Made by a program: the position numbers and the translations under genes. DNA of 64,000 bases, taken from NCBI RefSeq assembly GCF_006345805.1, contig NC_043010.1, positions 17,484,001 through 17,548,000 of the forward strand. The letters are read 5' to 3'. The DNA is from Octopus sinensis (lineage: Eukaryota). A model generated the notes under the pieces. It searched no databases and was not told where the DNA came from. It saw only the letters and a list, made by a program, of their open reading frames with translations. Of this stretch, positions 11,850-62,585 are shown in pieces; within the stretch, counting starts at the first letter, position 1, and every line of letters begins with the position of its first letter.

Positions 11850-12657
11850 CTTAAAAAGAAGAAATATTCAGTCTTTTATGGCCTTAACAATTATGATGAT
11901 GATGATGAATATACCAAACTTTATTATTATTACTATTATTATTTTTTGATTTTGGATTTGGTTTGCAAGATTCTTTATATGAGTTCGTGTGTTGAAGCAT
12001 ATTCTGTTGTGTCTGGGGAGAGTCATTCTCTTTTAGTGCCTTATTATTTAACACACTCACCGGTAAAATTTCCACTTATTTTGTCTTTTTCTTTTCCTAA
12101 AATTTTCGTTGCGTCTTGCAACCTTTTCAATAGTCTTGACTCTGAGTTCAAATTCCGCCAAAGTCGACTTTGCCTTTCATCCTTTCGGGGTCGATAAATT
12201 AAGTACCAGTTACACACTGGGGTCGATGTAATCGACTTAATCCCTTTGTCTGTCCTTGTTTGTCCCCTCTGTGTGTAGCCCCTTGTGGGCAGTAAAGAAA
12301 TAAGAAATAATAAAGGGATGACATTGTAGGAATCAGATGTCCAAATTCCTCACTGGTCACAATCCACTTCAACCCTACTCTTTCATTTGGGTCCAAATTA
12401 TTTCTCTATCATCTTGAAGGACTTTTGAGTGGCTTCTTTCAATGTCTTGGTTTTTATTTTTTTACACAGGTCCATCAGTTGACTTGTAAGGCTCAAATTG
12501 TCTGAAAAGAATGATGCAGACAAAAGTCAAACAGCCGTAACAACTGCTAGATATGTTTTAAATACAATGAAGGCAATATGTGGCCAAGTGGTCAAAGTGT
12601 CCAGATTAAGGTCATGAATTTGATACCTAGCAGTGCCTTTTGTCCTTGAGTAAGGTA

Positions 12658-13262
12658 CTCTATTTCCTATTTCTTTACTACCCACAAGGGGCTACACACA
12701 GAGGGGACAAACAAGGACAGACAAACAGATTAAGTCGATTATATCGACCCCAGTGCGTAACTGGTACTTATTTAATCGACCCCGAAAGGATGAAAGGCAA
12801 AGTTGACCTTGGCAGAATTTGACTCAGAATGTAGCACTAGACGAAATACCTATTTCTTTCCTACCCACAAGGGGCTAAACACAGAGAGAACAAACAAGGA
12901 CAGACGAACAGATTAAGTCAATTACATCGACCCCAGTGCGTAACTGGTACTTATTTAATCGACCCCGAAAGGATGAAAGGCAAAGTCGACCTCGGCAGAA
13001 TTTGAACTCAGAACATAGCGGCAGACGAAATACCTATTTCTTTATTACCCACAAGGGGCTAAACACAGAGGGGACAAACAAGGACAGACATAGGTATTAA
13101 GTCGATTACATCGACCCCAGTGCGTAACTGGTACTTAATTTATCGACCCCGAAAGGATGAAAGGCAAAGTCGACCTCGGCGGAATTTGAACTCACAACGT
13201 AACGCAGACGAAATACCGCTAAGCATTTCGCCCGGCGCGCTAACGATTCTGCCAGCTCGCCA
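12658..13262 (-). mobile_element. Three tandem copies of SINE family B (head GGCGGCGAGCTGGCAG); other copies at 12140-12305, 21019-21238, 25192-25406, 26405-26582, 47295-47450
   Basis: ~185-230-nt units joined at 'gacgaaatac|ctatttc'. Only the last unit has the head. Confidence 0.88.
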
Positions 13263-14309: not shown

Positions 14310-15627
14310 GAAAGTCACAGAGAGGGTCATAGCCCAACTAATTAGGGAGTGAGTCAGTCTAGATGAGATGCAGTTTGGGTTGGTGCCAGGGAGAAGCACC
14401 ACTGGTGCTATATTTCTGGTAAGAAAGCTGAAGGAGAAATACCTAGCCAAAGATAAGCCCCTGGACCTGGCTTTCGTTGACATGGAGAAAGCCTTTGACA
14501 GGGTCCTCCAATCCCTTATCTGGTGGTCAATGTGGAAACTAGGGATAGATGAGTGGTTAGTGAGAGCTGTACAAGCAATGTACAGGGTGGTGTCAGTAAG
14601 GTGAAGGTTGGCAACGAGTACAGTGAAGAATTTCGGGGTAGAGGTAGGGGTCCACCAAGGATCAGTTCCCAGCCCCCTCTTGTTCATCATAGTCTTCCAG
14701 GCAGTAGCAGAGGAATCCAAGACAGATTGCACCTGGGAGCCCCTCTATGCTGGTGACTTTGCTCTAATAGCTGAGTCACTATCAGAACTAGAGCAGTTTC
14801 AGGTGTGGAAGCAAGGTCTAGAATCGAAAGGCCTTAGGGACAATCTAACAAAAACCAAAGTCTTAATAAGTAGGAAGGCAGGCAAACCACAAATACCTTC
14901 AGGTTGATGGCCCTGCTCGATCTGTAGAAAAGGGGTAGGTAGAAATTCCATAACATGTACCCATTATATGGACATATAAGAGGTGTAGCAATATCAAAGG
15001 AAGGCTAACTGGGAAGACAGATTTTGTGTGCGGAAAATGTACAGGGACAGTAAAAACTGAAAATGTGCAGAAAACAGCTTCCGTCACATGCCAGTGGGTG
15101 TTCTGTGAGTGTAGCTGCAAAATAAGAATAGCCTGGACAAAGTTCAGAGAGCTCCTACTTCTGCTGGTGACAAAGGGCCTCTCGCTCAGAGTAAAAGGTA
15201 GACTGTATGACGCATGTGTGTGAACAGCCATGCTACATGGCAGTGAATCATGGGCTGTGACTGCTAAGGACATGCATAGGCTTGTAAGAAATGAAGCAAG
15301 TATGCTCTGTTAGATGTGTAATGTCAGTGTGGATGCACGACAGAGTGTAAGCACCCTGAGAAAAAAGTTGGACATAAAAAGCATCAAATGTGGTGTGCAA
15401 GAGAGATGACTGTGCTGGCATGGTCAGGTGTTGCATATGAATGAGGACAGCATGAAAAAGTGGCACACCCTAACAGTAGAGGGAACCTGTCGAAGAAGTA
15501 GACCCAGGAAGACCTGGGATGAGGTGGTAAAGCATGACCTTCAAGCGTTGGGCCTCACAGAGGTAATGACAAGAGACCAAGACCTTTGGAGATACGCTGT
15601 GCTTCAGAAGATCTGGCAAGCCAAGTA
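14310..15627 (+). mobile_element. RTE-clade LINE, 5'-truncated and degenerate
   Basis: QFGLVPGRSTTGAIFLVR...AFVDMEKAFDRV...GVHQGSVPSPLLF...LYAGD; C-terminal GRP-like 'SRPRKTWDEVVKHDL'. Confidence 0.88.
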
Positions 15628-17610: not shown

Positions 17611-17811
17611 AAAAATCCAGCAACATATGAATTCGAGACGTTAGCAGCACCAGAATCCCAGGCTGCACTTGTTTCTCCAAGCCAAAGTTTCTTTCCTGGA
17701 GCATGGTTTCTCAAAATATCATTGGCTGAAGCAAGTTCCTTTTCCAAATAGTCCATAACTGCTACATCGTAAAACTGCGAAAGTTTGGCATATTTACCAT
17801 CAAGATAATAT
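17611..17811 (-). CDS. HPSE: Heparanase-like exon 6 (nucleophile Glu)
   Basis: ttccag| ... |gtaagt, 201 nt. YYLDG...PGKKLWLGETSAAWDSGAANVSNSYVAGF. Confidence 0.96.
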
Positions 17812-17984
17812 CTGGAAGAAAACAGGAACGTTTAAGAAGCTGTTTCAGTTTATTGCAATGAAAAGGACAAGGAGCTTAATTAAACCATTTTTACTCAACG
17901 AGAATATCTCTTAATTAAAGTAGGGAGATGTAACAGGAAACAAACTTGGCATTATACAAGAATTGATTAACAAGAAATCATCAT

Positions 17985-18343
17985 CATCATCATCATCATG
18001 ACAATAGATAATGAGAATTCTTGAGAGCAATGCAATGCAATGCAGACAACAATGTGTCACTGTGTGTGTGTGTGGGTGAGTGAGTGAGTGAGAGTGGGTG
18101 TGTGTGTGAGAGAGAGAAAGTGAGTGAAAGTGTGTGTGTGAGAGAGAGAGAGTGAGTGTGTGTGTGAGAGAATGAGTGGGTGTGTATGTGTGTGTGAGAG
18201 AGAGAGAATGTGTGAGTGGGTGTGTGAGAGAATGGGTGTGTGTGTGAGTGTGAGAGAGTGGGTGTGTGTGCACATGTGCGTTTGTGTGTGTGAGAGAGAG
18301 AGTGCATGTGCATGTGTGTGTGTGTGATAGAGAGAGAGAGAGA

Positions 18344-18374
<31 letters not shown>

Positions 18375-18455
18375 TGGGTGGGTGTGTATGTGTGTGTGAT
18401 AGAGAGAGAGAGAGTGGGTGTGTGTGTGCACATGTGCGTGTGTTTGTGAGTGAGC
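17985..18455. repeat. Compound (CAT)n/(TGCAA)n/(GT)n(GA)n microsatellite
   Basis: Visible directly in the sequence. Confidence 0.95.
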
Positions 18456-18657
18456 CATTAGTTACCTACGCATCCAGAGGACTGTTAAAGTAGGGTTGAA
18501 ACTAACCGATGACAATAGCATCATCATCATCATCATCATCACATCAACAACAATAGTCAGTCCACAATGAACCTTCTAGAAGGTCACTCGACCTGCTATA
18601 TATATATATATATGAATAAATAAATAAATGGAGTTGAATGAAGATGTTAATAAAATT

Positions 18658-18750
18658 CCTTTACTTTCAACATATGTTTCGAAGACAACATGGTTTTATT
18701 CCAAAGGAATAAACGGTGTAAGATGCAATCTTCTCATCAGGAAAGAAAGG
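18658..18750 (-). ncRNA. Type I hammerhead ribozyme fold with a canonical core
   Basis: Minus strand: CCUUU-CUUUC CUGAUGA GAAGAUUGCAU...AUGUUGUCUUC GAAAC AUAU GUU GAAAG-U-AAAGG. Stems I, II and III all pair, and the NUH triplet is GUU. Confidence 0.8.
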
Positions 18751-18961
18751 GAGCCTCTCTCAACAACAAGACAATACAATAATTACGAGGACTGCCTACA
18801 TGATAAACAAAACCATGTTGACGGTAAACATAGGATAATTCATTCACCCATCGATATATATATATATACTTTATTTAAAAGCAGCAGAAATATAACAAAA
18901 GCTGTTACTCGGAGTTTCATGTTCCCGTTTGTCGGACAGTTTTGTTAAAATAGAACCGAAA

Positions 18962-18999
18962 CTGTCCGACGAACGGGAACGTGAAACTCCGAGTAACAG
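18962..18999 (+). ncRNA. Minimal hammerhead-like motif (core variant CCGACGA), PLE pseudo-LTR type
   Basis: CUGU CCGACGA AC-GGGAAC-GU GAAAC UCCGA GUA ACAG. Stem I is CUGU/ACAG, stem III is near-palindromic (ACUC-C-GAGU), and the triplet is GUA. U4 is replaced by C. Confidence 0.5.
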
Positions 19000-19103
19000 C
19001 TTTTGTTATATTTCTGCTGCTTTTAATTAAAGCATATTACTCTACCTCTGGTATTTGAGTACTCTTTTTTCCACCTTGTTTCACATTTATGTGCTAACTC
19101 CGG

Positions 19104-19164
<61 letters not shown>

Positions 19165-20167
19165 CTGAGAGAGAGACAGACAGACAGACAGATAGAGAAA
19201 GAGTTTACTGTTCCATTAAGGTAAGATCAACAAAAAGTGTACTCCATCCAGTGAGAGATAAGTAAATATCATTGAATGTAAACTGTATTCAGATGAGAGC
19301 TATTAATGATTTGCTCCATTTGAAAATCAGGACACTGGTACACCAGAAACCACTGAGAAAAATATGAGAAGAAGGTTGATGCAAAAAAGAGGAAGGAGAA
19401 GACAAAGAGTGAATAAAAATGATAAAAGAAAGGAAAGAAAGAAATTTAGGGTCACGTCCCCTTTGACTAGAAGTCACAATGTACTTATAAAATAAAATAA
19501 AAAATTAACAGAGAGGTGTCTAAAGTCTGCAAGGCAGCTGCTCAATTCAGAGAGGGTGATGTCCTCCAGTTCACTAAAAGAAATATGTCCATAGGCTTAC
19601 ATTTACTGAAAATTTCGGATCTAGAATTAAGTAGTGTGTTGGAATTTTGGGGATCAAAAAAGAATGTGTGATCTTTCAGCAATATATAAGTTGTATTTCT
19701 TAGATCCATTTATATATGGTAAGGATTTTTCAACAATTCTCTATTTGGTTGTATGTGGTGTGCAGTTGGTCTTCAAACATCATACATGGCTAGCCAACCT
19801 AATGGTTTTACTTTTGTCGATATGCCAGAAAGAATGGTTTGCATAATGTCTTTCAAAATTGCCTTCACATAAACCAATGTAATTTTTCTTTTCAGGTATA
19901 TTACCTTGAAGTGTTGTTGTGACTTCTGCTTCATAGATGATAGTTTATCATACATGCCTGGTTAAGTGGGCAAGCTTCAGCATCTCAACAGGTACAACTG
20001 GGAGTGAGCTCTTGATGAAGCTTATGAGTGATAATGTCCTGCATATTAAGGCAGCAGCTGTATATCTCTATTGAGTTTTTATTAGAAAAATTTCCTGTAT
20101 TTATGGTTTACTGGGAAATTCATATTTGAAAGAGCCAAGAATTTCTTGCCTGCATTAGTTTTAACAT

Positions 20168-20525
20168 TTAAGGAGAAAGGGTGGGGGACCATATTATTTT
20201 CCTAGGTCTGTTATTAGATTTCATATTTTTAATTGTAGGGTTGTAATATATCTTAACTTTGAAGCCACTGTTAGCTAGGGCATTTTTATAGTAGGGGGTT
20301 ACCTTATCAAATATTTCTTTTGAAGAGAAGAGATTAGATATCCTATTAATAATGTTAGCTACCAGGTTTCTAAGCACTAGAGAAGGGGTAACAGTACTGT
20401 TTGTATATGTCAGAGAGTTTCTCATTTCGTTTATGGTAAGGTTTATAAAAGAGGGAGTTCAGGTCTAGGGAAACATCTAAAAAGTTGACTTTGGACAGTG
20501 ATTAACACGTTTATGTAAATTCAGT
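20168..20525 (-). mobile_element. Penelope-like RT thumb/linker fragment (degenerate)
   Basis: Frameshifted FLDVSLDL...YKPYHK and 'INRISNLFSSKEIF...YYKNALANSGF...RPRKIIW' pattern typical of the PLE RT C-terminus. Confidence 0.7.
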
Positions 20526-21345
20526 CACCTTATTGAGCTACAATCTCAATATTGAAGAATAAAAATCTACAATACCAAATTGAGTAAATCTGACCCCATG
20601 TTTGTCCTTTAAATTCTGAAACTAATCTATTATAGTGCTGTTATTAGCCCATTTCTGTAGCTAAGTAGTCCCTCTCATTCTGAGTACCTTTTGTAGGGAC
20701 TACTAAACTGATTTCAGGCTTTGCTGGGTTTAAAAGCCTACAGTCAAAGGGGACGTAACTCTCATTTTCTTTCCCTTCTTTATCTGAGTCTATTCCCTGT
20801 TTCTCTTCTAATTCAACTCTTTTGCATCTACCTTCTCCTTGTCTTTTGTCGTTTCTCAAGTATCTGCATCCTAATTTTCAAATAGAACAAACCATGAGCT
20901 CAGAGCCTGGATATTGCTTGCAGACACAAGGCACATTATAAATCCTGCCTAACCACATGTCTTAATGGCTAGAACTTATTAGTAGCTCTTAGTTAAATAC
21001 ATTAAATGATATAAATATATCTATTTCTTTACTACCCACAAGGGGCTAAACACAGAGAGGACAAACAAGGACAGACAAACGGATTAAGTCAATTACATCG
21101 ACCCCAGTGCATAACTGGTACTTAATTTATCGACCCCGAAAGGATGAAAGGCAAAGTCTTTGAACTCAGAACATAACGGCAGGCGAAATACGGCTAAGCA
21201 TTTGACCCGGCGTGCTAACGTTTCTGCCAGCTTGCCGCCTTGATATAAATATACCGTCATCATGCATAATCCAAATATCATTCATCCATCCATGAAATGA
21301 CAGACCTTAAAATGCTAAGAATATAAGACAAGTCCAATAACATAC

Positions 21346-21393
21346 TGATGTAGAGTAACAGCATCCAAGGAAGTGTGGGCCGCATCTAGGTAT
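21346..21393 (-). CDS. HPSE: Heparanase-like exon 5 (48-nt small exon)
   Basis: tgacag| ... |gtatgt. (K)YLDAAHTSLDAVTLH(Q) corresponds to HPSE 'FLKAGGEVIDSVTWHH'. Phases 2/2 fit both neighbours. Confidence 0.9.
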
Positions 21394-39837: not shown

Positions 39838-40161
39838 CTAACATGTATATTTTCTATTTAGTATTGGGGAGGTTTCATTTATAAGGACATACTCCCATAT
39901 TGGTCTGAGTGTTGGGTCTTTTGGGTGCTTGGATAAGATGCGGATGTTGAGTTGACCCAAGTTGCCTCCATGGTGGTCTTTGGCATGCTGGTAGAGTATG
40001 GAGGACTGTTTCTTGTCGTCATATTGTCTCAGATGTTCATTTATTCGTTCCACAATGCTCCTCGATGTCTTCCCTATGTACATCATGTTCATTTCTTTAC
40101 AAGAAATGAACATGAAAAACAGAAAGTGTTCTGAGGAGTGAACAAGAAAATGTTCCATCAT
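39838..40161 (-). mobile_element. GIY-YIG endonuclease fragment of a Penelope-like element
   Basis: MYIGKTSRSIVERINEH...SILYQHAKDHH...E.VLINETSPILN. Confidence 0.8.
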
Positions 40162-40907
40162 TTTGTTGCTAAAAGATTTTTGTTAGTGAATAAATATAAA
40201 CCCAACATAGTTTGCAGTTGATAACATCTTGTCAGTGTTGCAAAGTTTGGATTTAGTGCTTCATAGCAGCACAACGGTAAAAATGACAGTCTGGTAGCTA
40301 TGGTGGTAGGATGTATACCCTGGCAAGTCCAACCATGCTATTACTGGACTACCAACTCTACAGAAAGACTGTCTTACAGAACCAGGCCTACCTGAAAAAA
40401 GATAATTAGAGTACAAAGTGGTGGGAATGAGGTGATTGGGGAATACGGAAAGAACAAGTTCACAGAGTCAGCCATGTCACAAGGCACAGAACCAAGTGAA
40501 TGCATACAGTTGAGTATGATGTTGTGTAGAATCCAAGAGATCAAAGAAAACTACTCAGAAGACCTCCAAGAGGATGGGAAGTTAATAGAGTCAAACAATT
40601 TGGGCCCAAATGAAAGAGAAGGATGTCATCAAGGAAAGAATGGAAGTGCTGTGTGACCAGTGATGCATAAAGGTGTCTGATAGGCTTATAAGAAATTCTG
40701 CTGTAAACATTTTTGCCAGGAGAAAATTTGCTGGAACAAAAAAAGAATTGCAAAAAAAAAAAAAAAAAGGATTAGTTGTTTTCTTAAAATAGCAGCTTCA
40801 TCAATTAACCTACCAATTAGAGAAAGGTAATTTGTTTAACCCTTTCGTTGCTGCTTTTATTTTGAGATGCTCCAAGTTTCTTTCCATTAATTTTAAATAT
40901 AACAAGG

Positions 40908-42309: not shown

Positions 42310-45300
42310 AACAGTAATAACAACAACAAATAATAACATCTTATTTATCTGTATCTTCACTTTTTTTCTTCTTCTTCCTTTCTTTGTTTACCTTGCACCA
42401 CAGTACGGATGGGCAGACAGAACAAAACTGCCACGGTATCATCCGCGGATGAGCCATGCAACAAAACTGGTCGCTGTCCTACAATAGAACATTGCCCGGC
42501 AAATCACATCTGTCATCTATGCACAAAACTCGAAAATTCCTTCCGAAATAGATGGGTTGAATGCAGTAACTGTCGTGTTTCGATCTGCTTTCAATGTGCC
42601 ACAAACTTTCAGAAGATCCCAGGTCAAAAGAAAGGACACCATACTTCTATGATGGATAAACTCTGGGAAATGGTCCAGCTACCAAACTGGTCGTTTCATT
42701 GCCTGACTTGTGTGGCGACTTGTGTGTCCCCTGCCACCATTGCTGCTGAACAGCAACAACCAACTACTTTGTCTCCCAAAACCAGCCCTGTTATAAAGAA
42801 CAACAGCAAAAACTGAATCCGCCCATGTCTTCCTCCCCTGTCACTCTTCAACAGCAGCAACAAAAATCGGCCATTCATGTTGAAGAACAACAAAAACAGA
42901 AACTTAAACCCCCTATGTCTTCCTCCCCTATTGCTCTTGGACAACAAAAATTAATCATTCCAGCTGAAGTACATCAGCAGGAACAAAAACCAACCATGAT
43001 GCTTCCCAACTAAAACAGAGATCGACCATCAGCACAGAAGTTGCAGAAATTAGACGAATGATTTCCGCTTTGAGTCGTGAAGTAGCAGGACTCAGAACCA
43101 GTGTCTGTCCAAAAAACTCGCAGCGAAGGGTCATATAGGAGTGCCCTGCTCAGCAACTTACCTGTAGCTCGTACAGAACCTCAACGCATCGAGGGAGTTG
43201 CTGAGCCGGCCACTCATGAATTAATAGCCACCGGAGTGCCGGAAGATGTGGCAGATCTGCAGGCATTCATTGGAAACACAGGTAGGGATCGCAGCTGTGT
43301 CCCTCCAAAAAGTGCTTCCCGCCTTGGCCGACCGGGATCCAAACCCAGGCTGATCAGGCTGTTGTTTACAGGCTCTACTGAGGCGTGGACATTCCATCTG
43401 GCTGCTGACAGAGCTCGGCGTGACAACATTATCAACTTTAGAACACGTCCTGGCCTACCACCCGATGTACGCCCAAAGCTAAGATCCGTGGCTTCCCTAA
43501 ATCGCAACTCTGTGCCACGGGAGAGTTTTAGCCTCCGCGATGATGGGCAGATCTGGAAATTTGTCAAGTCTGGTGAGTCGTGGATAAGGGATGCCAGTTG
43601 GACTGAGCAGACTACACCCACAACAACAACTGGCAATGCAAAAATCTTGGGAAACTAACCAAGAACAATCAGCCATCCCCTGTATATCATCATCTGAAAT
43701 CCAGATATAAACTGCTGTCCTTGAATGCCCGTAGTTTATGCAACAAGGTGCATCTTTTTGTCTCCTACGTCAAAAGTATCAACCCAGATTTCATCACAGT
43801 CATGGAAACGTGGGCACACTCTGCACTCTGTGATGGAGTTTTCAGCATAGCCGGCTACAACCTGTTCCGCAAAGACCGCATTAATTGCCGTGGAGGGGGT
43901 GAGATGATTTATGTTCGATCAAGTCTATCGGCAATCCCCTGTGATGATTTGAACCAATCTCAGCAGGAGGTATTTTTCTGCAATGTACACATGACCATGT
44001 CAACACTTCTGCTCGGAGTCGTTTACCGTCCTCCAAATTATCGCCAAGACGCACAGCTTTTTGATATCCTCAGGGCGGCTGCCATGAAAACAGCCACATA
44101 TGTGTATGTTGCGGGGGACTTCAATTTCCCTGAGATTGACTGGGAGGCCTTCCGTTGGCCGCAAAGTGCAGACGATTTCCTTGAACTGGTGCTGAATTCA
44201 AATTGGTCCCAAGTTGTTACCTCCCCCACAAGGGGTAAGAACACTTTGGATCTGCTACTTACTGCTTCTCCTGAAACAATCATTAGTGTCGCTACCGAAG
44301 AACCTTTGGGTAACTCTGATCATTCCATGATCATGGCCGACTTGTCTCTGATTGGTTGTAACAAAAAACACAACCATCTTCAGATTGCCCGCTTTGACTG
44401 GAATAAAGCAAACTGGAGCTCTTATTGTACTGAGCTGCAACGCCCAAACTGGCGCAAATTTTATGCCTCTGCAGATGTGGACACTATACTCCAGAACATT
44501 CTGAATTCAATATGGGAAGCATGTGCAGCATCAGTACCACGCAAGCACAAAAAACCACCCAATAGTGCAATTTGGGAGACTGCAGCAGTCCGACTTGCCA
44601 GGAAAGAACGCCGTAATGCTGAACGGGAATACAAATTGCACAAATCAGAGAGCAACAGGAAAAAGCGCAATAGGTCAGCCAACCACCTCAAGCAGGTGAC
44701 AAAAAAGGCAGTGCTTGAATTTGAACAACGCATTACAGCTAACCCTGACAGCAAAGGGTTCTGGAAGTATGTGCACTCAAAGCAGAGACCCCACTCTCCA
44801 GTTGGTCCCCTTCGCAATCCCCACACAGGACAGATTACTGGCAATCCCGAAGAATGTGCAGAAATCATTGCTGGATGCTATGCTGGCATCTTTACTGTCG
44901 AAGACCAAAATGTTCCATCTTCATCACCACTGACATCGGACTCTATATCTTCTATGCAATTTACACCAGCAATGCTGCAACGCCACCTAAAGAATAAACG
45001 CAATTATGCCTCTCCTGGTCTCGATGGTGTTACATACCTACTTCTCAAACGCGGTGGGTACTTTCTTCTAAGCCAACTTTCTCTATTCTTCCAATTCTGT
45101 CTTGACAATGGTGTTACTCCAGAACAGTGGAAAACTGCCAGTGTCATCCCTCTGTTCAAAAAAGGCGACCGCACATCGCCCCGTCAGTCTTACTAGCTGC
45201 ATCGCCAAACTGATGGAATCCTGTATCAGAGAAACCCTCTGGAACTTCTGGAAGTCTAACAGCCTCATCCAGCCATCACAATTCGGATTTATTCCTAACT

Positions 45301-46617
45301 CCAGCTGCTGTAATCAACTCATCGAGTTTCTTGAGGACGTTACCCAAATCACTGATCGCAGATCCTGGGTGGATGTTGTTTACCTGGACTTTGCTAAGGC
45401 TTTTAACTCTGTGCTACACAAAAGACTTATGGTGAAGCTTTCTGCGTTGGGTGTAAGAGACAAACTCTATAACTGGTTAAAGTCCTTTATTTTCGGCCGA
45501 AAAGAGGTTGTCACAGTTCTAGGACAGCACTCTTCGCCCTATGAGATGACATCTGGTGTGCAGCAGGGATCTGTTCTTGGCCCCCTTTTATTTGTTGCAT
45601 ATGTTAATGACATAGATGCCAACTTAAAGAATGCCACAGTGCTGAAATATGCAGATGACATCAAGCTGTACCTCGAAATAAAGAGGTCAAATCCTGTACA
45701 CTATGGATCTCTATTGCAAGCAGACCTGGACACAATGCAGCAGTGGATCATGGACTGGCAACTCAAGCTGGCTGTGGACAAATGTACCACCATGCATTTT
45801 GGGAGGAGAAACCCAGCGTCCACCTACTCCCTCCACAACACTAGTCTCAAAAAGTCTTCAAGTGAACGTGACCTGGGTGTTATTGTCGACAGTGATTTGC
45901 GTTGGACAAAACACATCGCTAAAATTGTCAAGAAGGCTGAGGGTGTCTTGGCATCACTCACCAAATCCTTTGTGAGCCGCTCTCCGGCTATCTATCTGCG
46001 GCTTTATATAGCTATGGTAAGACCTCACCTGGAATTTGCATCACCGGTCTGGAACCCCTATCTTGCCCAGGACATCAATCGTCTGGAAGCTGTTCAGCGA
46101 CGTGCAACCAAAAGAATACCCTCCATCAGGCATTTGCCATATCCTGAACGCCTTACTTCCCTGGGCATGGACACATTGAAACTCCGACGTCTGGCAGCTG
46201 ACTTGGCAGACACCCATAAAATTATCAACCATCACACAAACAATAACTCTGAGCACCTCTTCAAACTCCACCCATCTAACACCCGTGGACATATTTACAA
46301 AGTAAGAAAACAGCACAGCTCCCATGACTTCAGGAAACATTTTTTCACGCTGAGAGTTGCTGAAGCATGGAACAAACTGCTGGCATCAGTTGTTAGTTGT
46401 CGGAGCACTGCATCCTTCAAAACTTCCATGCTTCCTGAGATTCGCCAACACTACACTTGATTTTCTCCCCTCCATACACATACAAGCATGTATCTGACTC
46501 ATACATTATTCGCTTTCCAGACATTTGTACATTACTGCATATACTTTATATGCACTTTCTGACAAGTTGTGGTGCACCTGAGCACTGTATACAATAATTT
46601 CATTATTATTATTATTA
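42310..46617 (+). mobile_element. Near full-length CR1-group LINE (ORF1 with PHD finger; ORF2 APE endonuclease plus RT; (ATT)n tail), inactivated
   Basis: ORF1 region 42409-43658 has C-x2-C...C-x2-C...C-x2-C...HCLTC and RLGR...PRLIRL, interrupted by stops. ORF2 43721-46460 has NARS, YRPP, GDFN, SDH, YLDFAKAF and KYADD, with a frameshift near 45180. The tail is 'ttcattattattattatt'. Confidence 0.93.
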
Positions 46618-50677: not shown

Positions 50678-52057
50678 CTATTTTTTTAACATACTTCTAC
50701 CGAGGAAATATAATTCAATTTCCTCAAGAGATTTCCCTTTTGTTTCGGGTAACACAAACCACACGAAAAAAACCCCAGCAAAAGAAAAAGCGGAAAACAA
50801 CCAGAATGTTTCTGCTGGCCCAAAGCTTTCTTTCACTGTAATAAATTCTTTGGTGACTATAAATGCAAACAACCAGCTGGTAAATATTGAAAGGGCACTA
50901 GCTTTGCCCCGAGCATGAGATGGGAAAATCTCGGACATAATAAGCATTGGAATTGGCCCCCATCCAATAGAAAAACTTGCAATAAACACAACTAAACTGA
51001 TTAGAGGAAGAGTCTTCAAATTATTCGCTACAAGATAATTGTGTTCTTTCAAAGCGTAGTAAGATCCGAGTATAAAACAAGAAAAACTTAGAATCAATCC
51101 TCCACATATTAACAATTTACGGCGTCCAACACGATCCATTATTTGGGAAACAAAGAATGTAAATAGGATCTGTGTGGCTCCAATAATGGCACTTGCAAGG
51201 TAACTTTGATTTTCATAACCAGATTCTTTAAATATTGGAACAGCATAAAAGAGAACGGCATTAATACCAGTAAGTTGTTGCAGAATCATTAGACTTAGGG
51301 AAATAAAGATTGGTCTGGAAAGTTCAGGTTTTCTCCACATATCTCTATAGGATATATCTTGTACGTCTAATCCTTCTTCAATATCACGAATTTCGTCCTC
51401 GACATCGCAGTTGACAGATCGAAGTTTGGTCAGTGCTTGGATGGCTTCGACTCGACGGCCCTTGTAGAGTAACCAGCGAGGGGTTTCCGGCATTGATAAC
51501 GTAAAAAATAAGGAAAGAAATGGAAAAAGTATTCCGAACTTAGCCATTTGTATATAATCCATATACATTCCTAGGATATACGCCACAAAAATGCCAACTG
51601 TGATACTGAGCTGAACACTTGAGCCAAGCATTCCACGTAGAGATCTGGTTGAAATTTCAGCTATGTAAATGGGCGAGACAACACAGGTCATTCCAATGGC
51701 TATACCACTAACAATGCGGCTCAAATAAAACAAAATAACGTTAGAAGTAGCAATGAGGAGACACCAACCAACAATTAACGGTACTGATATGAAATTCATT
51801 GTATATTTTCGTCCGTGTTTCTCCACAAACCAACCCGCGATGGGTCCACCCAGCATGGCTCCGATGGTTACCATAGAACCGAACCATGCAGCTTGTTGCT
51901 CGTGTAGGAACTTACTCTTTAGTAATTCGGCAATGGCAGGAGAACTATATCCCAGGATGTAACCAAACGAGAAAGGTCCGAGGAAAGCAGCAAGGCATGA
52001 TGTGATAAACTGCCTGGATACAGACAAATGTTTACGGTGTAATCGTTCTGAGAACAT
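50678..52057 (-). CDS. Sugar porter (MFS) transporter, GLUT8/SLC2A8-Tret1-like, single uninterrupted ORF, 459 aa
   Basis: Sugar porter motifs GR(K/R) in loops 2 and 8 (EKHGRK, DRVGRR), YIAEIS..SLRG, PETPRWL, QQLTGINAVLFY, GWGPIPMLIMSEIFP and PETKGKSLEEI. About 12 hydrophobic segments. Confidence 0.93.
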   Translation of the reverse strand: MFSERLHRKHLSVSRQFITSCLAAFLGPFSFGYILGYSSPAIAELLKSKFLHEQQAAWFGSMVTIGAMLGGPIAGWFVEKHGRKYTMNFISVPLIVGWCLLIATSNVILFYLSRIVSGIAIGMTCVVSPIYIAEISTRSLRGMLGSSVQLSITVGIFVAYILGMYMDYIQMAKFGILFPFLSLFFTLSMPETPRWLLYKGRRVEAIQALTKLRSVNCDVEDEIRDIEEGLDVQDISYRDMWRKPELSRPIFISLSLMILQQLTGINAVLFYAVPIFKESGYENQSYLASAIIGATQILFTFFVSQIMDRVGRRKLLICGGLILSFSCFILGSYYALKEHNYLVANNLKTLPLISLVVFIASFSIGWGPIPMLIMSEIFPSHARGKASALSIFTSWLFAFIVTKEFITVKESFGPAETFWLFSAFSFAGVFFVWFVLPETKGKSLEEIELYFLGRSMLKK

Positions 52058-56994: not shown

Positions 56995-58256
56995 TATGTC
57001 ATAAATAACAGGGACAATTTCATATGACACCGGAAAAAATTGTTGTTGACACATTACGGCAGAAATCGTTTTCGCCTCAATAGACGTCATTGATTGGTTG
57101 AAATTGCCGAAATGCAAGAAATTAAAGACCAAATATCTTACAAACTACAGAATTTTCTCAAGAATGCCAAGAGAAAAAGATGTTTTATCAACACATTCTA
57201 CTAGTATACGAAGTTAAAAAATTTTTAGTTACAGAGAAATTATTTTAAAAATCTGCCGGTCAAAGCGAAAAGATTCGAATTTTCGATCTAATGCAGTCCA
57301 CACTCTCTCGAAAATGTATTTCTGCAAAATGTTATCTAAAGAAAGAAATAGCCAAAAATATTTGAAAATGGGAGTGGAGTGAAATTTCCGAGGGTTCCAC
57401 CCCCATCCCACCCCACCCCGTTTTCCGGATCCCCAAAAGGGTTTTGTAGCATATTCGTAGGTCACCGCAATTCAGTCAACGAAAAAAATTTACATTGATT
57501 CCGGGAGAGGTGTCCGGATCCCCTACTCCCTGCCCACCCCACCCACTTTTTTCCGAACAAAAATTAGGAGTTTGCAGCATATTAGGAAGTCAGGGTACTT
57601 GATTCCACGCAAAAAATCCGAGTGTATTTTTTTTTCTTAGTGAAAATCATGCGGGTGAAACGACCAAATAATATCCTGACTAACGGAACATGTAAATCGT
57701 ACATTCGGGCCCAGTTTGTATTATCAGGTTTTCGCTAAATTGAAGGGGACAGTTTACTCTAAAATGCAGAGATTTATGATATGTTGCAGTATTTCCTTGT
57801 GAAATCTGTTCTGTCTTTAGTGGTTACCCGTAATGAAACCGAGCAAGGTGCGACGAGTCTCTCTCCTTCCTTCTTAAAACTTGGTTGTTATCTTATATCT
57901 CTCTCTAATGTTGTGCTTCATAGAATAAAGAAGAATAATACTCGGAAACGAGAGAAGTTATGTTGTAATATATAACTGTGCATCGTCAAAAACCTTGAAA
58001 CTTTCCGCAGCAAATATAAACTTCAACTGGGTCCAACTGCCAGCCTAATTCATATGAAACACAACGAATAACTCCATGAATTTAGGTGGGGATTTAGAAA
58101 CAGAGCTCTGATAATTTGGTTAATAATTTCAAAATACTCTCCTTTCTCTATTCAGTAAATATAGGTTGTTGTCAGTGTTATTGTTGTGAACAAATAAAAA
58201 TAAAACTCGTTCTTAACAACGGAAGCGATGTTGTTAATTTCACTTTCATTATTACA

Positions 58257-58390
58257 ATGGCTGCGAATTGTCCGTCTGTCGGTTACTGGACCAACGTGAA
58301 AGGCTTGCTTTTAGATATAACAGGAGTTCTTTATGAAAGACATGGAAGCGAGGGTTGTGTCATTGAAGGTTCGGTTGAGGCTATACAAAG
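58257..58390 (+). CDS. LHPP: LHPP-type HAD phosphatase exon 1, copy 1
   Basis: MAANCPSVGYWTNVKGLLLDITGVLYERHGSEGCVIEGSVEAIQ(R) resembles the LHPP N-terminus 'VRGVLLDISGVLY...GSVEAV.R'. Phase-2 donor AG|GTATTT. Confidence 0.85.
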
Positions 58391-58730
58391 GTATTTCTCG
58401 CTATTTACTAGAATTATTTATGATTTGCATAGGTGACGATGTAGTAAAGACATCGATATCCAAAACTCATCCACAGCCCATCCCGTTATCATCATCATCA
58501 TCATCATCATCATCGTCATCTTTATCGGTGTCATCATTATCATTATGTTGTTATAGTTAATAGGGTGACGAAATGCTTTTCTGAGTTCAAATTCCGACGA
58601 GGTCGGCTTTGCCTTTCATCCCTTCGGGGTCGATAAATTAAGTACCAGTTGAATACTGGAGTCAATGTAATCGACTTAACGCGAAATTGCTGGCCTTGTA
58701 TCAGTATCTAAAATCAATATTATAATTAAT

Positions 58731-58771
<41 letters not shown>

Positions 58772-58882
58772 CACAAAATGCTAAAAATCGGGCGAGTGCA
58801 CAAAGTGAAAGAGAGTACAGGTTTTATTATTATTATCATCATCATCATCATCATTATTATTATTATTTTAATTATTATTTTA

Positions 58883-58942
<60 letters not shown>

Positions 58943-60039
58943 TTCGTTTATTTATTTTGCGTAATTGTAAACCCCTGAGGTTTAAAACATGGAAATAGGA
59001 TGGACTGATTCTAATTTCAAGATAACACTATTATTGCAAAACAACAACAACTATTGTTGTTGTTGTTGCTGTTGCTGCTGCTGTTGTTAAGCAACAAGAC
59101 GGGTAAGGGTGATTAGGTGATGGTCTAGGGCTTAGGGGCGGGAGACCCCAGACCTTGGGGGAAAAAAAACTTTGGTCGTCTTGTAGTTGAGGGCTCTTCG
59201 TTGACGCCCGACACCACTGGGAAGTGGCCCTCGAAGTCGCTGGAAATGGAGATCTCCAGGTCCAAATTCTTGAACGGCTGCTGCTGCTGTCCTTAGTTTG
59301 TTCTTATTCGGGCTCAGTATTGTTGTTGTTGTTGTTATTGTTGCAACAATTGTAACACAATTTTTAAAATTTGATCCACTCCACTCGATTTCCATGTTTA
59401 AAACCAACGTGGTTATTGGCTTCGGTGTCTTTAATGAAGACATTTGTTTGTAAATATCCTGACTAACGGAACATGTAAATCGTACATTCGGGCCCAGTTT
59501 GTATTATCAGGTTTTCGCTAAATTGAAGGGGACAGTTTACTCCAAAATGCAGAGATGTATGACATGTTGCAGTATTTCCTTGTGAAATCTGTTCTGTCTT
59601 TCGTGGTTACCCGTAATGAAACCGAGCAAGGTGCGACGAGTCTCTCTCCTTCCTTCTTAAAACTTGGTTGTTATCTTATATCTCTCTCTAATGTTGTGCT
59701 TCATAGAATAAAGAAGAAGAATACTCGGAAACGAGAGAAGTTATGTTGTAATATATAACTGTGCATCGTCAAAAACCTTGAAACTTTCCGCAGCAAATAT
59801 AAACTTCAACTGGGTCCAACTGCCAGCTTAATTCATATGAAACACAACGAATAACTCCATGAATTTAGGTGGGGATTTAGAAACAGAGCTCTGATAATTT
59901 GGTTAATAATTTCAAAATACTCTCCTTTCTCTATTCAGTAAATATAGGTTGTTGTCAGTGTTATTGTTGTGAACAAATAAAAATAAAACTCGTTCTTAAC
60001 AACGGAAGCGATGTTGTTAATTTCACTTTCATTATTACA

Positions 60040-60173
60040 ATGGCTGCGAATTGTCCGTCTGTCGGTTACTGGACCAACGTGAAAGGCTTGCTTTTAGATA
60101 TAACAGGAGTTCTTTATGAAAGACATGGAAGCGAGGGTTGTGTCATTGAAGGTTCGGTTGAGGCTATACAAAG
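60040..60173 (+). CDS. LHPP: LHPP-type exon 1, copy 2
   Basis: Same peptide and donor as copy 1. Confidence 0.8.
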
Positions 60174-60501
60174 GTATTTCTCGCTATTTACTAGAATTAT
60201 TTATGATTTGCATGGGTGACGATGTAGTAAAGACATCGATATCCAAAACTCATCCACAGCCCATCCCGTTATCATCATCATCATCATCGTCATCTTTATC
60301 GGTGTCATCATTATCATTATGTTGTTATAGTTAATAGGGTGACCAGCTGGCAGAGTCGTTAGCACGCTGGACGAAATGCGTTTCTGAGTTCAAATTCCGG
60401 GGTCGATAAATTAAGTACCAGTTGAATACTGGAGTCAATGTAATCGACAACGCGAAATTGCTGGCCTTGTATCATTATCTAAAATCAATATTATAATTAA
60501 T

Positions 60502-60549
<48 letters not shown>

Positions 60550-60711
60550 TTCACAAAATGTTAAAAATCGGGCGAGTGCACAAAGTGAAAGAGGATACAA
60601 GTTTTATTATTATTATCATCATCATCATTATTATTATTTTAATTTTTATTATTATTATTTTAATTATTATTACTATTATTATTATTATTATTATTATTAT
60701 CATTATTATTA

Positions 60712-60764
<53 letters not shown>

Positions 60765-61856
60765 TTCGTTTATTTATTTTGTGTAATTGTAAACCCCTGA
60801 GGTTTAAAACATGGAAATAGGATGGACTGAATCTAATTTCAAGATAACACTATTATTGCAAAACAACAACAACTATTGTTGTTGTTGTTGCTGCTGCTGT
60901 TGTTAAGCAACAAGACGGGTAGGGTGATTAGGTGATGGTCTAGGGCTTAGGGGCGGGAGACCCCAGACCTTGGGGGAAAAAAAACTTTGGTCGTCTTGTT
61001 GTAGTCGAGGGCTCTTCGTTGACGCCCGACACCACTGGGAGGTGGCCCTCGAAGTCGCTGGAAATGGAGATCTCCAGGTCCAAATCTTGAACGGCTGCTG
61101 CTGCTGTCCTTAGTTTGTTCTTATTCGGGCTCAGTATTGTTGTTGTTGTTGTTATTGTTGCAACAATTGTAACACAATTTTTAAAATTTGATCCACTCCA
61201 CTCGATTTCCATGTTTAAAACCAACGTGGTTATTGGCTTCGGTGTCTTTAATGAAGACATTTGTTTGTGAATATCCTGACTAACGGAACATGTAAATCGT
61301 ACATTCGGGCCCAGTTTGTATTATCAGGTTTTCGCTAAATTGAAGGGGACAGTTTACTCCAAAATGCAGAGATGTATGACATGTTGCAGTATTTCCTTGT
61401 GAAATCTGTTCTGTCTTTCGTGGTTACCCGTAATGAAACCGAGCAAGGTGCGACGAGTCTCTCTCCTTCCTTCTTAAAACTTGGTTGTTATCTTATATCT
61501 CTCTCTAATGTTGTGCTTCATAGAATAAAGAAGAATAATACTCGGAAACGAGAGAAGTTATGTTGTAATATATAACTGTGCATCGTCAAAAACCTTGAAA
61601 CTTTCCGCAGCAAATATAAACTTCAACTGGGTCCAACTGCCAGCTTAATTCATATGAAACACAACGAATAACTCCATGAATTTAGGTGGGGATTTAGAAA
61701 CAGAGCTCTGATAATTTGGTTAATAATTTCAAAATACTCTCCTTTCTCTATTCAGTAAATATAGGTTGTTGTCAGTGTTATTGTTGTGAACAAATAAAAA
61801 TAAAACTCGTTCTTAACAACGGAAGCGATGTTGTTAATTTCACTTTCATTATTACA

Positions 61857-61990
61857 ATGGCTGCGAATTGTCCGTCTGTCGGTTACTGGACCAACGTGAA
61901 AGGCTTGCTTTTAGATATAACAGGAGTTCTTTATGAAAGACATGGAAGCGAGGGTTGTGTCATTGAAGGTTCGGTTGAGGCTATACAAAG
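61857..61990 (+). CDS. LHPP: LHPP-type exon 1, copy 3 (remaining exons presumably lie beyond the window)
   Basis: Same peptide and donor as copy 1. Confidence 0.82.
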
Positions 61991-62318
61991 GTATTTCTCG
62001 CTATTTACTAGAATTATTTGTGATTTGCATGGGTGACGATGTAGTAAAGACATTGATATCCAAAACTCATCCACAGCCCATCCCGTTATCATCATCATCA
62101 TCATCGTCATCTTTATCGGTGTCATCATTATCATTATGTTGTTATAGTTAATAGGGTGACCAGCTGGCAGAGTCGTTAGCACGCTGGACGAAATGCGTTT
62201 CTGAGTTCAAATTCCGGGGTCGATAAATTAAGTACCAGTTGAATACTGGAGTCAATGTAATCGACAACGCGAAATTGCTGGCCTTGTATCATTATCTAAA
62301 ATCAATATTATAATTAAT

Positions 62319-62351
<33 letters not shown>

Positions 62352-62522
62352 TTCACAAAATGTTAAAAATCGGGCGAGTGCACAAAGTGAAAGAGGATAC
62401 AAGTTTTATTATTATTATCATCATCATCATTATTATTATTTTAATTTTTATTATTATTATTTTAATTATTATTACTATTATTATTATTATTATTATTATT
62501 ATCATTATTATTATCATTATTA

Positions 62523-62585
<63 letters not shown>

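What the first reader, a model, noticed from the sequence alone, without database searches (positions are those of the whole stretch)
18658..18750. Canonical hammerhead ribozyme in sense orientation inside heparanase intron 5
Seen: the minus strand, which is the heparanase pre-mRNA, reads CCUUU-CUUUC | CUGAUGA | GAAGAUUGCAU ... AUGUUGUCUUC | GAAAC AUAU GUU | GAAAG-U-AAAGG. Every core nucleotide is canonical, and G10.1-C11.1 is present. Stem I is 5 bp, a bulged U, then 5 bp. Stem II is unusually long: 11 positions with one U-U, capped by a further GUUUAUUCC/GGAAUAAA hairpin. Stem III is a palindrome (ACAUAUGU). Predicted cleavage is between 18669 and 18668. Known: minimal type I hammerheads with palindromic stem III occur in Penelope-like elements and retrozymes and can act as dimers. 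Inference: this copy could cut the heparanase intron co-transcriptionally and affect splicing or transcript level, or could mark an undescribed cephalopod retrozyme/PLE family with an extended stem II.
Basis: partly seen in the sequence, partly recalled or inferred. Interest (0 to 1): 0.85.

Follow-up and report, generated by a model that had tools for sequence, protein, structure and literature searches.

The report
Lone hammerhead ribozyme motif, octopus intron
A complete self-cutting "hammerhead" RNA motif lies in the sense strand of an intron of the Octopus sinensis heparanase gene. It is most likely a stray piece of a retrotransposon-type element, predicted to cut poorly on its own, so it is a credible but fairly ordinary find.

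Summary
The minus strand 18750..18658 spells a complete type I hammerhead: core CUGAUGA / GAA / A15.1-U16.1 / U17, G10.1-C11.1, helix I of 5+5 bp with a bulged U, helix II of 10 pairs plus one U-U capped by an 8-bp hairpin, and a palindromic helix III (ACAUAUGU). It is the only such motif in the window. It lies in sense orientation in a 3,534-nt GT-AG intron of a heparanase gene of Octopus sinensis.

The statistics are good but not overwhelming. I found 0 comparable motifs in 400 shuffles. With permuted "decoy" cores on the real, hairpin-rich sequence, 1-2 of 719 decoys reached similar helix quality, about 1e-3 per window. No Rfam hammerhead model matches. No second copy could be reached, so covariation is untested.

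The motif sits in a 240-bp, 34% GC unit bounded by (TA)n tracts. That unit folds back on itself in a way that disrupts the ribozyme, by roughly 8-9 kcal/mol (rough estimate). Helix III is not stable in a monomer, and the window holds no partner copy.

Best reading: a solitary Penelope-like-element or retrozyme-derived hammerhead inserted into a TA microsatellite, with little expected effect on heparanase. It is a new member of a known kind. Interest is modest.

The parts
18741..18750 (-). Helix I, 5' strand (CCUUUCUUUC; positions 2.x)
   Evidence: sequence. It pairs with 18658-18668 in the MFE fold.
18734..18740 (-). Core C3-A9: CUGAUGA
   Evidence: It is the only CUGANGA between 10.8 and 22.8 kb.
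18723..18733 (-). Helix II, 5' strand (GAAGAUUGCAU), starting with G10.1
   Evidence: Ten pairs plus one U-U with 18681-18691.
18695..18714 (-). Apical 8-bp hairpin that extends the helix II domain (GUUUAUUCC-UUU-GGAAUAAA)
   Evidence: The helix II domain alone folds at -12.1 kcal/mol.
18681..18691 (-). Helix II, 3' strand (AUGUUGUCUUC), ending with C11.1
18678..18680 (-). Core G12 A13 A14
18670..18677 (-). Helix III: A15.1 C15.2 - AUAU - G16.2 U16.1. It is a perfect 8-nt palindrome, able to form an 8-bp intermolecular helix in a dimer.
   Evidence: The monomer hairpin is not predicted to form (0.0 kcal/mol). The dimer duplex is -7.0 kcal/mol.
18669..18669 (-). U17. The predicted scissile bond is 3' of this base (between 18669 and 18668).
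   Evidence: by hammerhead numbering.
18658..18668 (-). Helix I, 3' strand (GAAAG-U-AAAGG; positions 1.x, bulged U at 18663)
18614..18853 (-). 240-bp, 34% GC unit that carries the hammerhead. It is the presumed inserted element (PLE 3' fragment or retrozyme monomer) and folds back on itself.
   Evidence: The 223-nt core of the unit folds at -56.8 kcal/mol, z = -3.2.
18597..18613 (.). (TA)n tract that bounds the unit on its 3' side (minus-strand sense)
18854..18868 (.). (TA)n tract that bounds the unit on its 5' side
18803..18820 (-). Upstream competitor CAACAUGGUUUUGUUUAU. It is complementary over 16 bp to the 3' half of the helix II domain.
   Evidence: MFE. The duplex is -20.4 kcal/mol, against -12.1 for the helix II domain.
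18754..18766 (-). Upstream competitor UUGUU-GAGAGAGG. It forms a local hairpin with helix I's 5' strand and part of the core.
   Evidence: The hairpin is -11.1 kcal/mol. It is also read as a type-III-like alternative.
17812..21345 (-). Heparanase intron (GT...AG, 3,534 nt) that contains the motif. The donor is 2,595 nt upstream of the motif. The acceptor is 856 nt downstream of the cleavage site.
   Evidence: The exon junction restores ...LHQ|YYLDG..., aligned to human heparanase WHHYYLNG.
21346..21393 (-). Upstream heparanase exon (...YLDAAHTSLDAVTLHQ)
17611..17811 (-). Downstream heparanase exon (YYLDGK...WLGETSAAW...AGFL)

Best explanation
This is a solitary, transposon-derived type I hammerhead.

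Origin (inferred): a roughly 240-bp AT-rich unit was inserted by reverse transcription into a (TA)n microsatellite inside a heparanase intron of Octopus sinensis. The unit is either the ribozyme-bearing pseudo-LTR or 3' piece of a 5'-truncated Penelope-like element (PLE), or a monomer of its non-autonomous derivative, a non-LTR retrozyme.

Normal role in the parent family (inferred): such hammerheads process multimeric element transcripts. They act mainly as dimers, in which the palindromic helix III of two copies forms one long helix.

This copy (inferred): it is transcribed only as a passenger of the heparanase pre-mRNA. It is predicted to be a poor self-cleaver for three reasons. Helix III is 2 bp and unstable. 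No partner copy lies within 64 kb. Upstream sequences of the same unit pair more strongly with helix I, the core and helix II than the ribozyme fold does. Any cut would fall inside the intron, 856 nt before the acceptor, so little effect on heparanase is expected.

Shown: the motif, its uniqueness in the window, the gene, strand and intron, the TA-bounded unit, and the competing folds.

Not shown: the transposon origin, the dimer mechanism, and the low activity.
For: Motif:
- It is complete and unique in the window.
- 0 of 400 shuffles reach its quality.
- It has the top helix score among 720 core permutations.

Architecture. It matches what the literature gives for invertebrate type I, PLE and retrozyme hammerheads:
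- Helix III of 2 bp with a palindromic tetraloop.
- G10.1-C11.1.
- Palindromic 15.2-16.2 plus loop 3.
- A longer helix II and a 5-bp proximal helix I (PMC4209133; PMC7229834).

Context:
- The unit is 34% GC and 240 bp, within the 170-400 bp and <45% GC range given for non-LTR retrozymes.
- It is bounded on both sides by (TA)n. (TA)n or AT-rich DNA is the reported preferred target of GIY-YIG PLEs (PMC8557442; PMC11167929).
- PLE hammerheads are reported mostly as dispersed single motifs from truncated copies.

PLEs in this genome:
- They are abundant and recently active in the sister species O. vulgaris: 31 families and 336 young insertions (PMC13282606).
- A PLE-type GIY-YIG relic lies in this same window.

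Predicted weak activity:
- The unit's MFE fold (z = -3.2) disrupts the hammerhead.
- The ribozyme-compatible fold is about 8-9 kcal/mol worse. This figure is a placeholder approximation, because hard constraints failed in the sandbox.
- Monomer helix III is not predicted to form.
Against: - No second copy was found, so there is no family, no covariation and no tandem array.
- No PLE reading frame adjoins the motif. The nearest GIY-YIG relic is 21 kb away, and its 3'UTR has no hammerhead core.
- No Rfam hammerhead covariance model matches, even at E <= 10 on 121 nt.
- The extra nucleotide between A9 and G10.1 that is typical of PLE min-hammerheads is absent.
- A 53-nt helix II domain is unusual.
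- U17 is a less common cleavage-site base (from my own knowledge).
- TA-flanked fold-back MITEs are also common in this window. So the TA flanks and the fold-back are not specific to retroelements.
- Decoy cores show that hairpin-rich real sequence gives near-equal architectures at about 1e-3 per window.
Confidence: 0.6

Rival explanations
1. Chance motif. This is an AT-rich, hairpin-rich stretch that happens to carry CUGAUGA and GAAA...UH in the internal loops of a long imperfect hairpin. There is no evolved ribozyme.
For: - On the real sequence, decoy cores give helix scores of 19 and 17 against 20 for the true core. That is about 1-3 chance architectures per 1,000 windows of this genome.
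- The permissive descriptor hits 0.12 times per shuffled window.
- A 22-base core-plus-stem pattern returned 4 plainly fortuitous matches in metagenomes.
- No Rfam hit.
- No relatives found.
- Helix I is a polypyrimidine/polypurine pair of low complexity.
Against: - The best decoys have loose helix III spans (22-27 nt). The true motif has the compact 2-bp plus palindromic-tetraloop form.
- It also has G10.1-C11.1. These are features outside my descriptor that the literature lists as marks of authentic metazoan hammerheads.
- Multiplying these in gives roughly 0.1-1 expected chance cases per whole genome (my estimate). PLE-derived hammerheads typically number in the thousands.
- 0 of 400 shuffles reach the observed quality.
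Confidence: 0.2
2. A fold-back DNA element (MITE-like) inserted at TA, in which the hammerhead-like arrangement is a by-product of its palindromic structure, or a ribozyme carried by a DNA transposon rather than a retroelement.
For: - The 223-nt unit is an imperfect fold-back (z = -3.2).
- It has weak terminal inverted similarity: GGGTGAATGAA near the 5' end and TTCATTCAACTCC near the 3' end.
- It is TA-bounded, like the neighbouring 174-bp palindromic MITE at 18864-19037 and the fold-back at 1082-1468.
Against: - The terminal similarity is short (a 7-nt perfect core) and could be chance.
- The hammerhead hairpin is off-centre by about 36 nt relative to the unit.
- Viroid-like and retrozyme RNAs are also strongly self-complementary, so the fold-back does not discriminate.
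- No second copy is available to show terminal inverted repeats or target-site duplications.
Confidence: 0.13
3. An exapted, functional intronic ribozyme that cuts the heparanase pre-mRNA co-transcriptionally and tunes splicing or transcript level, in the manner proposed for conserved intronic hammerheads of amniotes.
For: - It lies in sense orientation within an intron.
- The core and all three helices are intact.
- A recent survey reports retrozymes depleted from introns, implying that genic copies are selected against. A retained sense copy could therefore be special (bioRxiv 10.64898/2026.07.22.740005).
Against: - There are no conservation data.
- The monomer helix III is unstable, and competing folds are 8-9 kcal/mol better by my rough estimate.
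- It is not similar to HH9 or HH10 (no Rfam hit).
- It is embedded in microsatellite and MITE debris typical of neutral intron sequence.
- From my memory of the reporter-gene literature (not checked here), hammerhead cleavage inside an intron had little effect on splicing unless cleavage was very fast.
Confidence: 0.07

Closest known systems
Type I hammerheads of metazoan non-LTR retrozymes (Cervera & de la Pena 2020, PMC7229834)
   Same: - Type I topology.
- Helix III of 2 bp capped by a tetraloop, described there as 'similar to invertebrate HHRs'.
- A low-GC unit of a few hundred bp.
- A strongly self-paired RNA in which the ribozyme fold competes with a more stable fold.
- Mollusc (mussel) examples that likewise lack the archetypal loop1-loop2 contacts.
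   Different: - Retrozymes are defined by tandem repeats that each carry a hammerhead. This is a single copy with no repeat.
- Helix II here is a 53-nt domain rather than about 4 bp plus a loop.
- Expression as circular RNA is unknown.
Hammerheads in the pseudo-LTRs of Penelope-like elements, including min-HHRs (Cervera & De la Pena 2014, PMC4209133; Frangieh et al. 2024, PMC11167929)
   Same: - G10.1-C11.1.
- Palindromic 15.2-16.2 and loop 3.
- A longer-than-usual helix II and a short proximal helix I.
- They occur mostly as dispersed single motifs from truncated copies.
- Low or protein-assisted activity, with a dimer model.
- Insertion into AT-rich or (TA)n DNA.
   Different: - No adjoining RT/GIY-YIG frame and no second flanking repeat.
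- No unpaired nucleotide between A9 and G10.1.
- Helix II is far longer than the 6-8 bp reported.
Conserved intronic hammerheads of amniotes (HH9, HH10; de la Pena & Garcia-Robles 2010, cited in PMC7229834)
   Same: Sense-strand hammerhead inside an intron of a protein-coding gene.
   Different: - Those are defined by deep conservation at orthologous positions and have Rfam models. Here conservation is untested and no Rfam model matches.
- Those have stable helices for monomer activity (from my own knowledge).
'HHR_half_core' cases in Naiad PLEs (Craig et al. 2021, PMC8557442)
   Same: The two core halves are separated by an unusually long spacer (35-50 nt there, 53 nt here). Naiads prefer (TA)n targets, and remnants occur in Octopus.
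   Different: Those were reported as not fitting hammerhead stem/loop descriptors. This one fits fully. No Naiad sequence could be obtained for comparison.

Membership tests
Hammerhead ribozyme (type I) | Conserved core: C3 U4 G5 A6 N7 G8 A9, G12 A13 A14, A15.1-U16.1, H17 (not G) | tested here: met
   reading and descriptor hit. The core is CUGAUGA / GAA / A...U / U17.
Hammerhead ribozyme (type I) | Three helices radiating from the core in the order I-II-III, with helix I open-ended and G10.1-C11.1 closing helix II | tested here: met
   Helix I is 5+5 bp, helix II is 10 pairs plus a U-U, and helix III is 2 bp plus a tetraloop.
Hammerhead ribozyme (type I) | Match to a curated covariance model (Rfam Hammerhead_1, _3, _II, HH9, HH10) | tested here: not met
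   No hit at gathering score on the window. No hit at E <= 10 on 601 nt or on 121 nt. The probable reason is the 53-nt helix II domain and the minimal helix III, but this was not shown.
Hammerhead ribozyme (type I) | Helices supported by compensatory changes among homologues | not testable with these tools
   No homologue was found in the window, in protein-indexed assemblies or in metagenome and viral contigs.
Hammerhead ribozyme (type I) | Mg2+-dependent site-specific self-cleavage | not testable with these tools
   This needs in vitro transcription. The predicted energetics are unfavourable for a monomer.
Hammerhead ribozyme (type I) | Tertiary contact between a loop or bulge in helix I and loop 2 | tested here: inconclusive
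   A bulged U sits after 5 bp of helix I, where loop 1 usually lies. Helix II has no loop at about 4 bp, only a U-U and G-U region at pairs 6-8. Mussel retrozyme hammerheads also lack the archetypal contacts.
PLE pseudo-LTR hammerhead | Located in a repeat that flanks an RT plus GIY-YIG reading frame | tested here: not met
   No such frame lies within several kb. The only GIY-YIG relic is at 39838-40182 and has no hammerhead core after it. Truncated solo copies are, however, the majority class in the literature.
PLE pseudo-LTR hammerhead | Palindromic 15.2-16.2 and loop 3, and a conserved G10.1-C11.1 | tested here: met
   ACAUAUGU is a perfect palindrome and G-C is present.
PLE pseudo-LTR hammerhead | Unpaired nucleotide between A9 and G10.1 | tested here: not met
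   A9 is followed directly by G10.1.
PLE pseudo-LTR hammerhead | Insertion into AT-rich or (TA)n target DNA | tested here: met
   The unit is bounded by (TA)n at 18597-18613 and 18854-18868. This is not specific, because TA-flanked MITEs occur nearby.
Non-LTR retrozyme | Head-to-tail tandem repeats (about 170-400 bp), each with a type I hammerhead | tested here: not met
   It is a single unit. No tandem array was found by TRF, the repeat finder or blastn. It could only be a 'solo monomer' as defined.
Non-LTR retrozyme | Low GC (<45%) and a highly self-paired unit | tested here: met
   34% GC. The fold has z = -3.2.
Conserved intronic hammerhead (HH9/HH10-like) | Conservation at the orthologous intron across species | not testable with these tools
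   No orthologous cephalopod locus could be fetched. The heparanase exon query found no protein.

The most novel reading that the evidence does not exclude
This copy may represent an undescribed cephalopod family of type I hammerheads whose helix II is a 53-nt two-tier domain. Such motifs escape Rfam models and the usual descriptors. They could be the 'missing' ribozyme of PLE lineages reported as lacking canonical hammerheads (the long-spacer 'HHR_half_core' cases). Less likely, this particular copy has been exapted to cut the heparanase pre-mRNA.
Probability: 0.22. Interest if true: 0.55.

Novelty: new member of a known kind. Interest (0 to 1): 0.3.

Why it matters
If it is genuine, this would be the first hammerhead pointed out in a cephalopod genome. 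I found no paper that describes one.

It would also show that standard covariance models miss hammerheads with large helix II domains. That matters for counting ribozyme-bearing retroelements in the large, repeat-rich cephalopod genomes.

For heparanase biology it probably matters little. A weak, solitary intronic ribozyme is expected to be nearly neutral. It would become interesting only if it is conserved in other cephalopods or demonstrably cleaves in vivo.

Tried and rejected
1. Rfam at three stringencies and window sizes: no hammerhead family matched.

2. Second copies in the window: none found with blastn at word size 7, nhmmer --max, or 3-mismatch searches of both ribozyme halves. Scans for type II and type III topologies found only an alternative reading of the same core.

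3. Reaching other octopus DNA through protein look-ups:
- Exact look-ups of three arbitrary ORFs failed.
The heparanase exon found no candidate. The GIY-YIG relic found one 918-nt Logan contig with no hammerhead. The ORF across the unit found none.
- The one exhaustive HMMER job on that ORF gave two low-complexity repeat proteins that are unrelated.

4. Pattern scan CTGATGAGAAG-N25-55-CTTCGAAACNNNNGT: 4 metagenome hits, all fortuitous with no helix I. Viral contigs gave 0.

5. Comparison of the unit with the 3'UTRs of the PLE relic and of L001: no significant similarity.

7. ViennaRNA structure evaluation and hard constraints failed in the sandbox. I replaced them with a placeholder-hairpin estimate, so the 8-9 kcal/mol figure is approximate.

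8. I considered whether the neighbouring 174-bp palindrome (18864-19037) was an inverted PLE copy. I rejected this because its arms are symmetrical about their own centre, do not include the hammerhead, and it has TTAA on both sides.

Full report
**What is there**

On the minus strand, 18750 to 18658 reads as follows: CCUUUCUUUC | CUGAUGA | GAAGAUUGCAU - CUUACACC - GUUUAUUCC UUU GGAAUAAA - ACC - AUGUUGUCUUC | GAA | AC AUAU GU | U | GAAAG U AAAGG.

In hammerhead numbering this gives:
- C3-A9 = CUGAUGA
- G10.1-C11.1
- G12 A13 A14
- A15.1-U16.1 and C15.2-G16.2
- U17, with the scissile bond between 18669 and 18668

Helix I is 5 bp, a bulged U (18663), then 5 bp, all Watson-Crick. Helix II has 11 positions: 8 Watson-Crick pairs, 2 G-U pairs and 1 U-U. 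An asymmetric internal loop and an 8-bp hairpin follow it. Helix III plus its loop is the perfect palindrome ACAUAUGU.

A descriptor I wrote (helix I >=4, helix II >=3, helix III >=2) finds this site and no other on either strand of the window. The local MFE fold keeps helices I and II.

**Is it more than chance?**

- In 400 dinucleotide-preserving shuffles of the window, the permissive descriptor hit 47 times (0.12 per window). No hit had helix I >=5 and helix II >=6.
- Shuffles destroy the many inverted repeats of this genome. I therefore also kept the real sequence and permuted the letters of the core (720 combinations).
- The true core has the best combined helix score (20). Two decoys reach 19 and 17, both with a loose helix III span of 22-27 nt.
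- The honest figure is therefore about 1e-3 per 64-kb window for this helix quality.
- It is lower, by my estimate 1e-5 to 1e-6, if one also counts the compact palindromic helix III and G10.1-C11.1. Cervera and De la Pena list these as descriptor-independent marks of genuine metazoan hammerheads.
- That corresponds to roughly 0.1-1 chance case per octopus genome. A real family would be expected to have thousands of copies.

**What argues for caution**

- No Rfam hammerhead model matches, at gathering threshold on the window or at E <= 10 on 601 or 121 nt. The likely cause is the 53-nt helix II domain and the minimal helix III, but I could not test that.
- There is no second copy, even degenerate, in the 64 kb.
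- I could reach no other cephalopod DNA. Exact-protein look-ups and all three homology searches gave nothing useful. The exhaustive HMMER search of the ORF that overlaps the unit gave only unrelated repeat proteins.
- A core-plus-stem pattern found four fortuitous matches in metagenomes and none in viral contigs.

**Gene and organism**

- Translated minus-strand segments at about 29.1, 27.3, 25.0, 21.35, 17.7 and 13.55 kb align colinearly with human heparanase. The match to 5la4_A has E = 1.3e-41 and includes ELGN(G)E, GPDV, WLGETS and WLDKLGL.
- The motif lies between the exon 21393-21346 and the exon 17811-17611. These join across GT...AG (intron 21345-17812, 3,534 nt) to give LHQ|YYLDG, aligned with human WHHYYLNG.
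- The hammerhead is thus in the sense strand of the pre-mRNA. It is 2,595 nt from the donor, and its cleavage site is 856 nt from the acceptor.
- I did not count upstream exons, so 'intron 5' is unverified.
- An intronless sugar-transporter ORF at 50678-52057 is encoded identically on CM016872.1 of GCA_006345805.1. That assembly is Octopus sinensis.

**Local anatomy**

- The motif sits in a 240-bp, 34% GC unit (18614-18853), bounded by (TA)n tracts at 18597-18613 and 18854-18868.
- The next 235 bp hold a 174-bp near-perfect palindrome with TTAA on both sides, a MITE-like element. A third (TA)n tract follows at 19104-19164.
- This looks like one TA microsatellite split by two insertions.
- The 223-nt core of the unit folds into an imperfect fold-back (-56.8 kcal/mol, z = -3.2, 1 of 200 shuffles as good). 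That fold does not contain the hammerhead.
- Upstream CAACAUGGUUUUGUUUAU (18820-18803) pairs over 16 bp with the 3' half of the helix II domain. That duplex is -20.4 kcal/mol, against -12.1 for the helix II domain itself.
- UUGUU-GAGAGAGG (18766-18754) forms an -11.1 kcal/mol hairpin with helix I's 5' strand and part of the core.
- A placeholder calculation puts ribozyme-compatible folds 8-9 kcal/mol above the MFE in three different contexts. This figure is approximate, because hard constraints failed in the sandbox.
- Helix III is not predicted to form in a monomer. The palindrome gives a -7.0 kcal/mol duplex between two copies.

**Comparison with what is known**

- The literature describes metazoan type I hammerheads with helix III of 1-2 bp capped by a small palindromic loop. 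They are poorly active as monomers and active as dimers.
- Invertebrate retrozyme hammerheads typically have 2 bp plus a tetraloop. Mussel examples lack the classical loop-loop contacts. Retrozyme units are 170-400 bp and <45% GC.
- PLE hammerheads have a longer helix II, a short helix I, a conserved G10.1-C11.1 and a palindromic 15.2-16.2 plus loop 3. They are found mostly as single dispersed motifs from truncated copies.
- One PLE hammerhead cleaves only with the element's protein.
- GIY-YIG PLEs prefer (TA)n or AT-rich targets.
- PLEs are numerous and recently active in O. vulgaris. A PLE-type GIY-YIG relic (Pfam PF01541, E = 1.8e-6) lies at 39838-40182 of this window, although without a hammerhead core behind it.
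- A 2026 preprint argues that animal retrozymes are non-autonomous PLE derivatives and are depleted from introns.

**Interpretation**

The best-supported reading (about 0.6) is a solo, retroelement-derived hammerhead: a truncated PLE end or a retrozyme monomer, inserted into a TA microsatellite in the heparanase intron. In its family it would process multimeric transcripts as a dimer. Here it is a passenger of the pre-mRNA with little predicted activity and little expected effect.

The rivals are:
- A chance motif in hairpin-rich sequence (about 0.2).
- A fold-back DNA element carrying the motif (about 0.13).
- An exapted regulator of heparanase (about 0.07).

Membership in 'hammerhead ribozyme' is met on sequence and secondary structure, but not on the Rfam models, and it is untested for covariation and activity. 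Membership in 'retrozyme' fails the tandem-repeat criterion. Membership in 'PLE pseudo-LTR hammerhead' fails the adjoining-ORF criterion and the 9/10.1-bulge criterion. I therefore say only that it works like these elements and probably derives from them.

**Novelty and score**

Hammerheads of this architecture are known in thousands of copies in many invertebrates. A lone intronic copy is not surprising. No paper I could find reports one in a cephalopod, and the very long helix II domain is unusual. This makes it a new member of a known kind, with interest 0.3. It would rise to about 0.55 if a long-helix-II family, or conservation in the intron, were shown.

Noticed in passing
window 18864-19037: A 174-bp near-perfect palindrome (88% between arms) with TTAA on both sides, sitting in the same TA microsatellite as the hammerhead unit. 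It looks like a piggyBac-type MITE. It produces strong but sub-threshold matches to several miRNA-precursor Rfam families.
   Followed up: partly
window 39838-40182 (-): A GIY-YIG endonuclease relic (Pfam PF01541, E = 1.8e-6). It ends in a stop codon, as expected for the C-terminal endonuclease of a canonical Penelope-like element, and it has no RT upstream. No hammerhead core lies in the roughly 100 nt before a TG-rich microsatellite. Its only database relative is a 918-nt Logan contig (L001, 48% identity).
   Followed up: partly
window 18754-18766 with 18741-18750 (-): The same catalytic core can be read in a type-III-like topology. Upstream GUU (U at 18762) would be the cleavage triplet, helix I would be closed (GAGAGAGG/CCUUUCUU) and helix III would be 3 bp. 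This is probably just the competing hairpin rather than a second ribozyme.
   Followed up: partly
window 12639-13189, with copies near 12141, 13810, 20993, 25147, 26411 and 47286: A 183/184-bp unit present as a tandem triplet and as dispersed direct and inverted copies (79-95% identity). It looks like a SINE. It contains no hammerhead core.
   Followed up: no
window 43607-46457 (+) and 14353-14904 (+): A LINE with long open frames for an endonuclease and a reverse transcriptase, seemingly young. A separate RT fragment (Pfam RVT_1, E = 9.6e-15) lies in the next heparanase intron downstream (between the 17.7-kb and 13.55-kb exons), not the one that holds the hammerhead.
   Followed up: partly
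window 50678-52057 (-): An intronless 459-aa MFS sugar-transporter gene (Sugar_tr/MFS_1). It is identical to a called gene on Octopus sinensis chromosome record CM016872.1, and this identified the organism.
   Followed up: yes
window 57670-63000: A roughly 1.8-kb unit repeated three times in tandem at 93-100% identity. It carries exons of a HAD-family hydrolase gene according to the gene calls of locus L006.
   Followed up: no
window 18061-18500: A 440-bp compound (TG)n/(GA)n microsatellite in the same intron, just downstream (in the sense of the gene) of the hammerhead unit. It generates long spurious His/Thr/Ser-rich ORFs.
   Followed up: no
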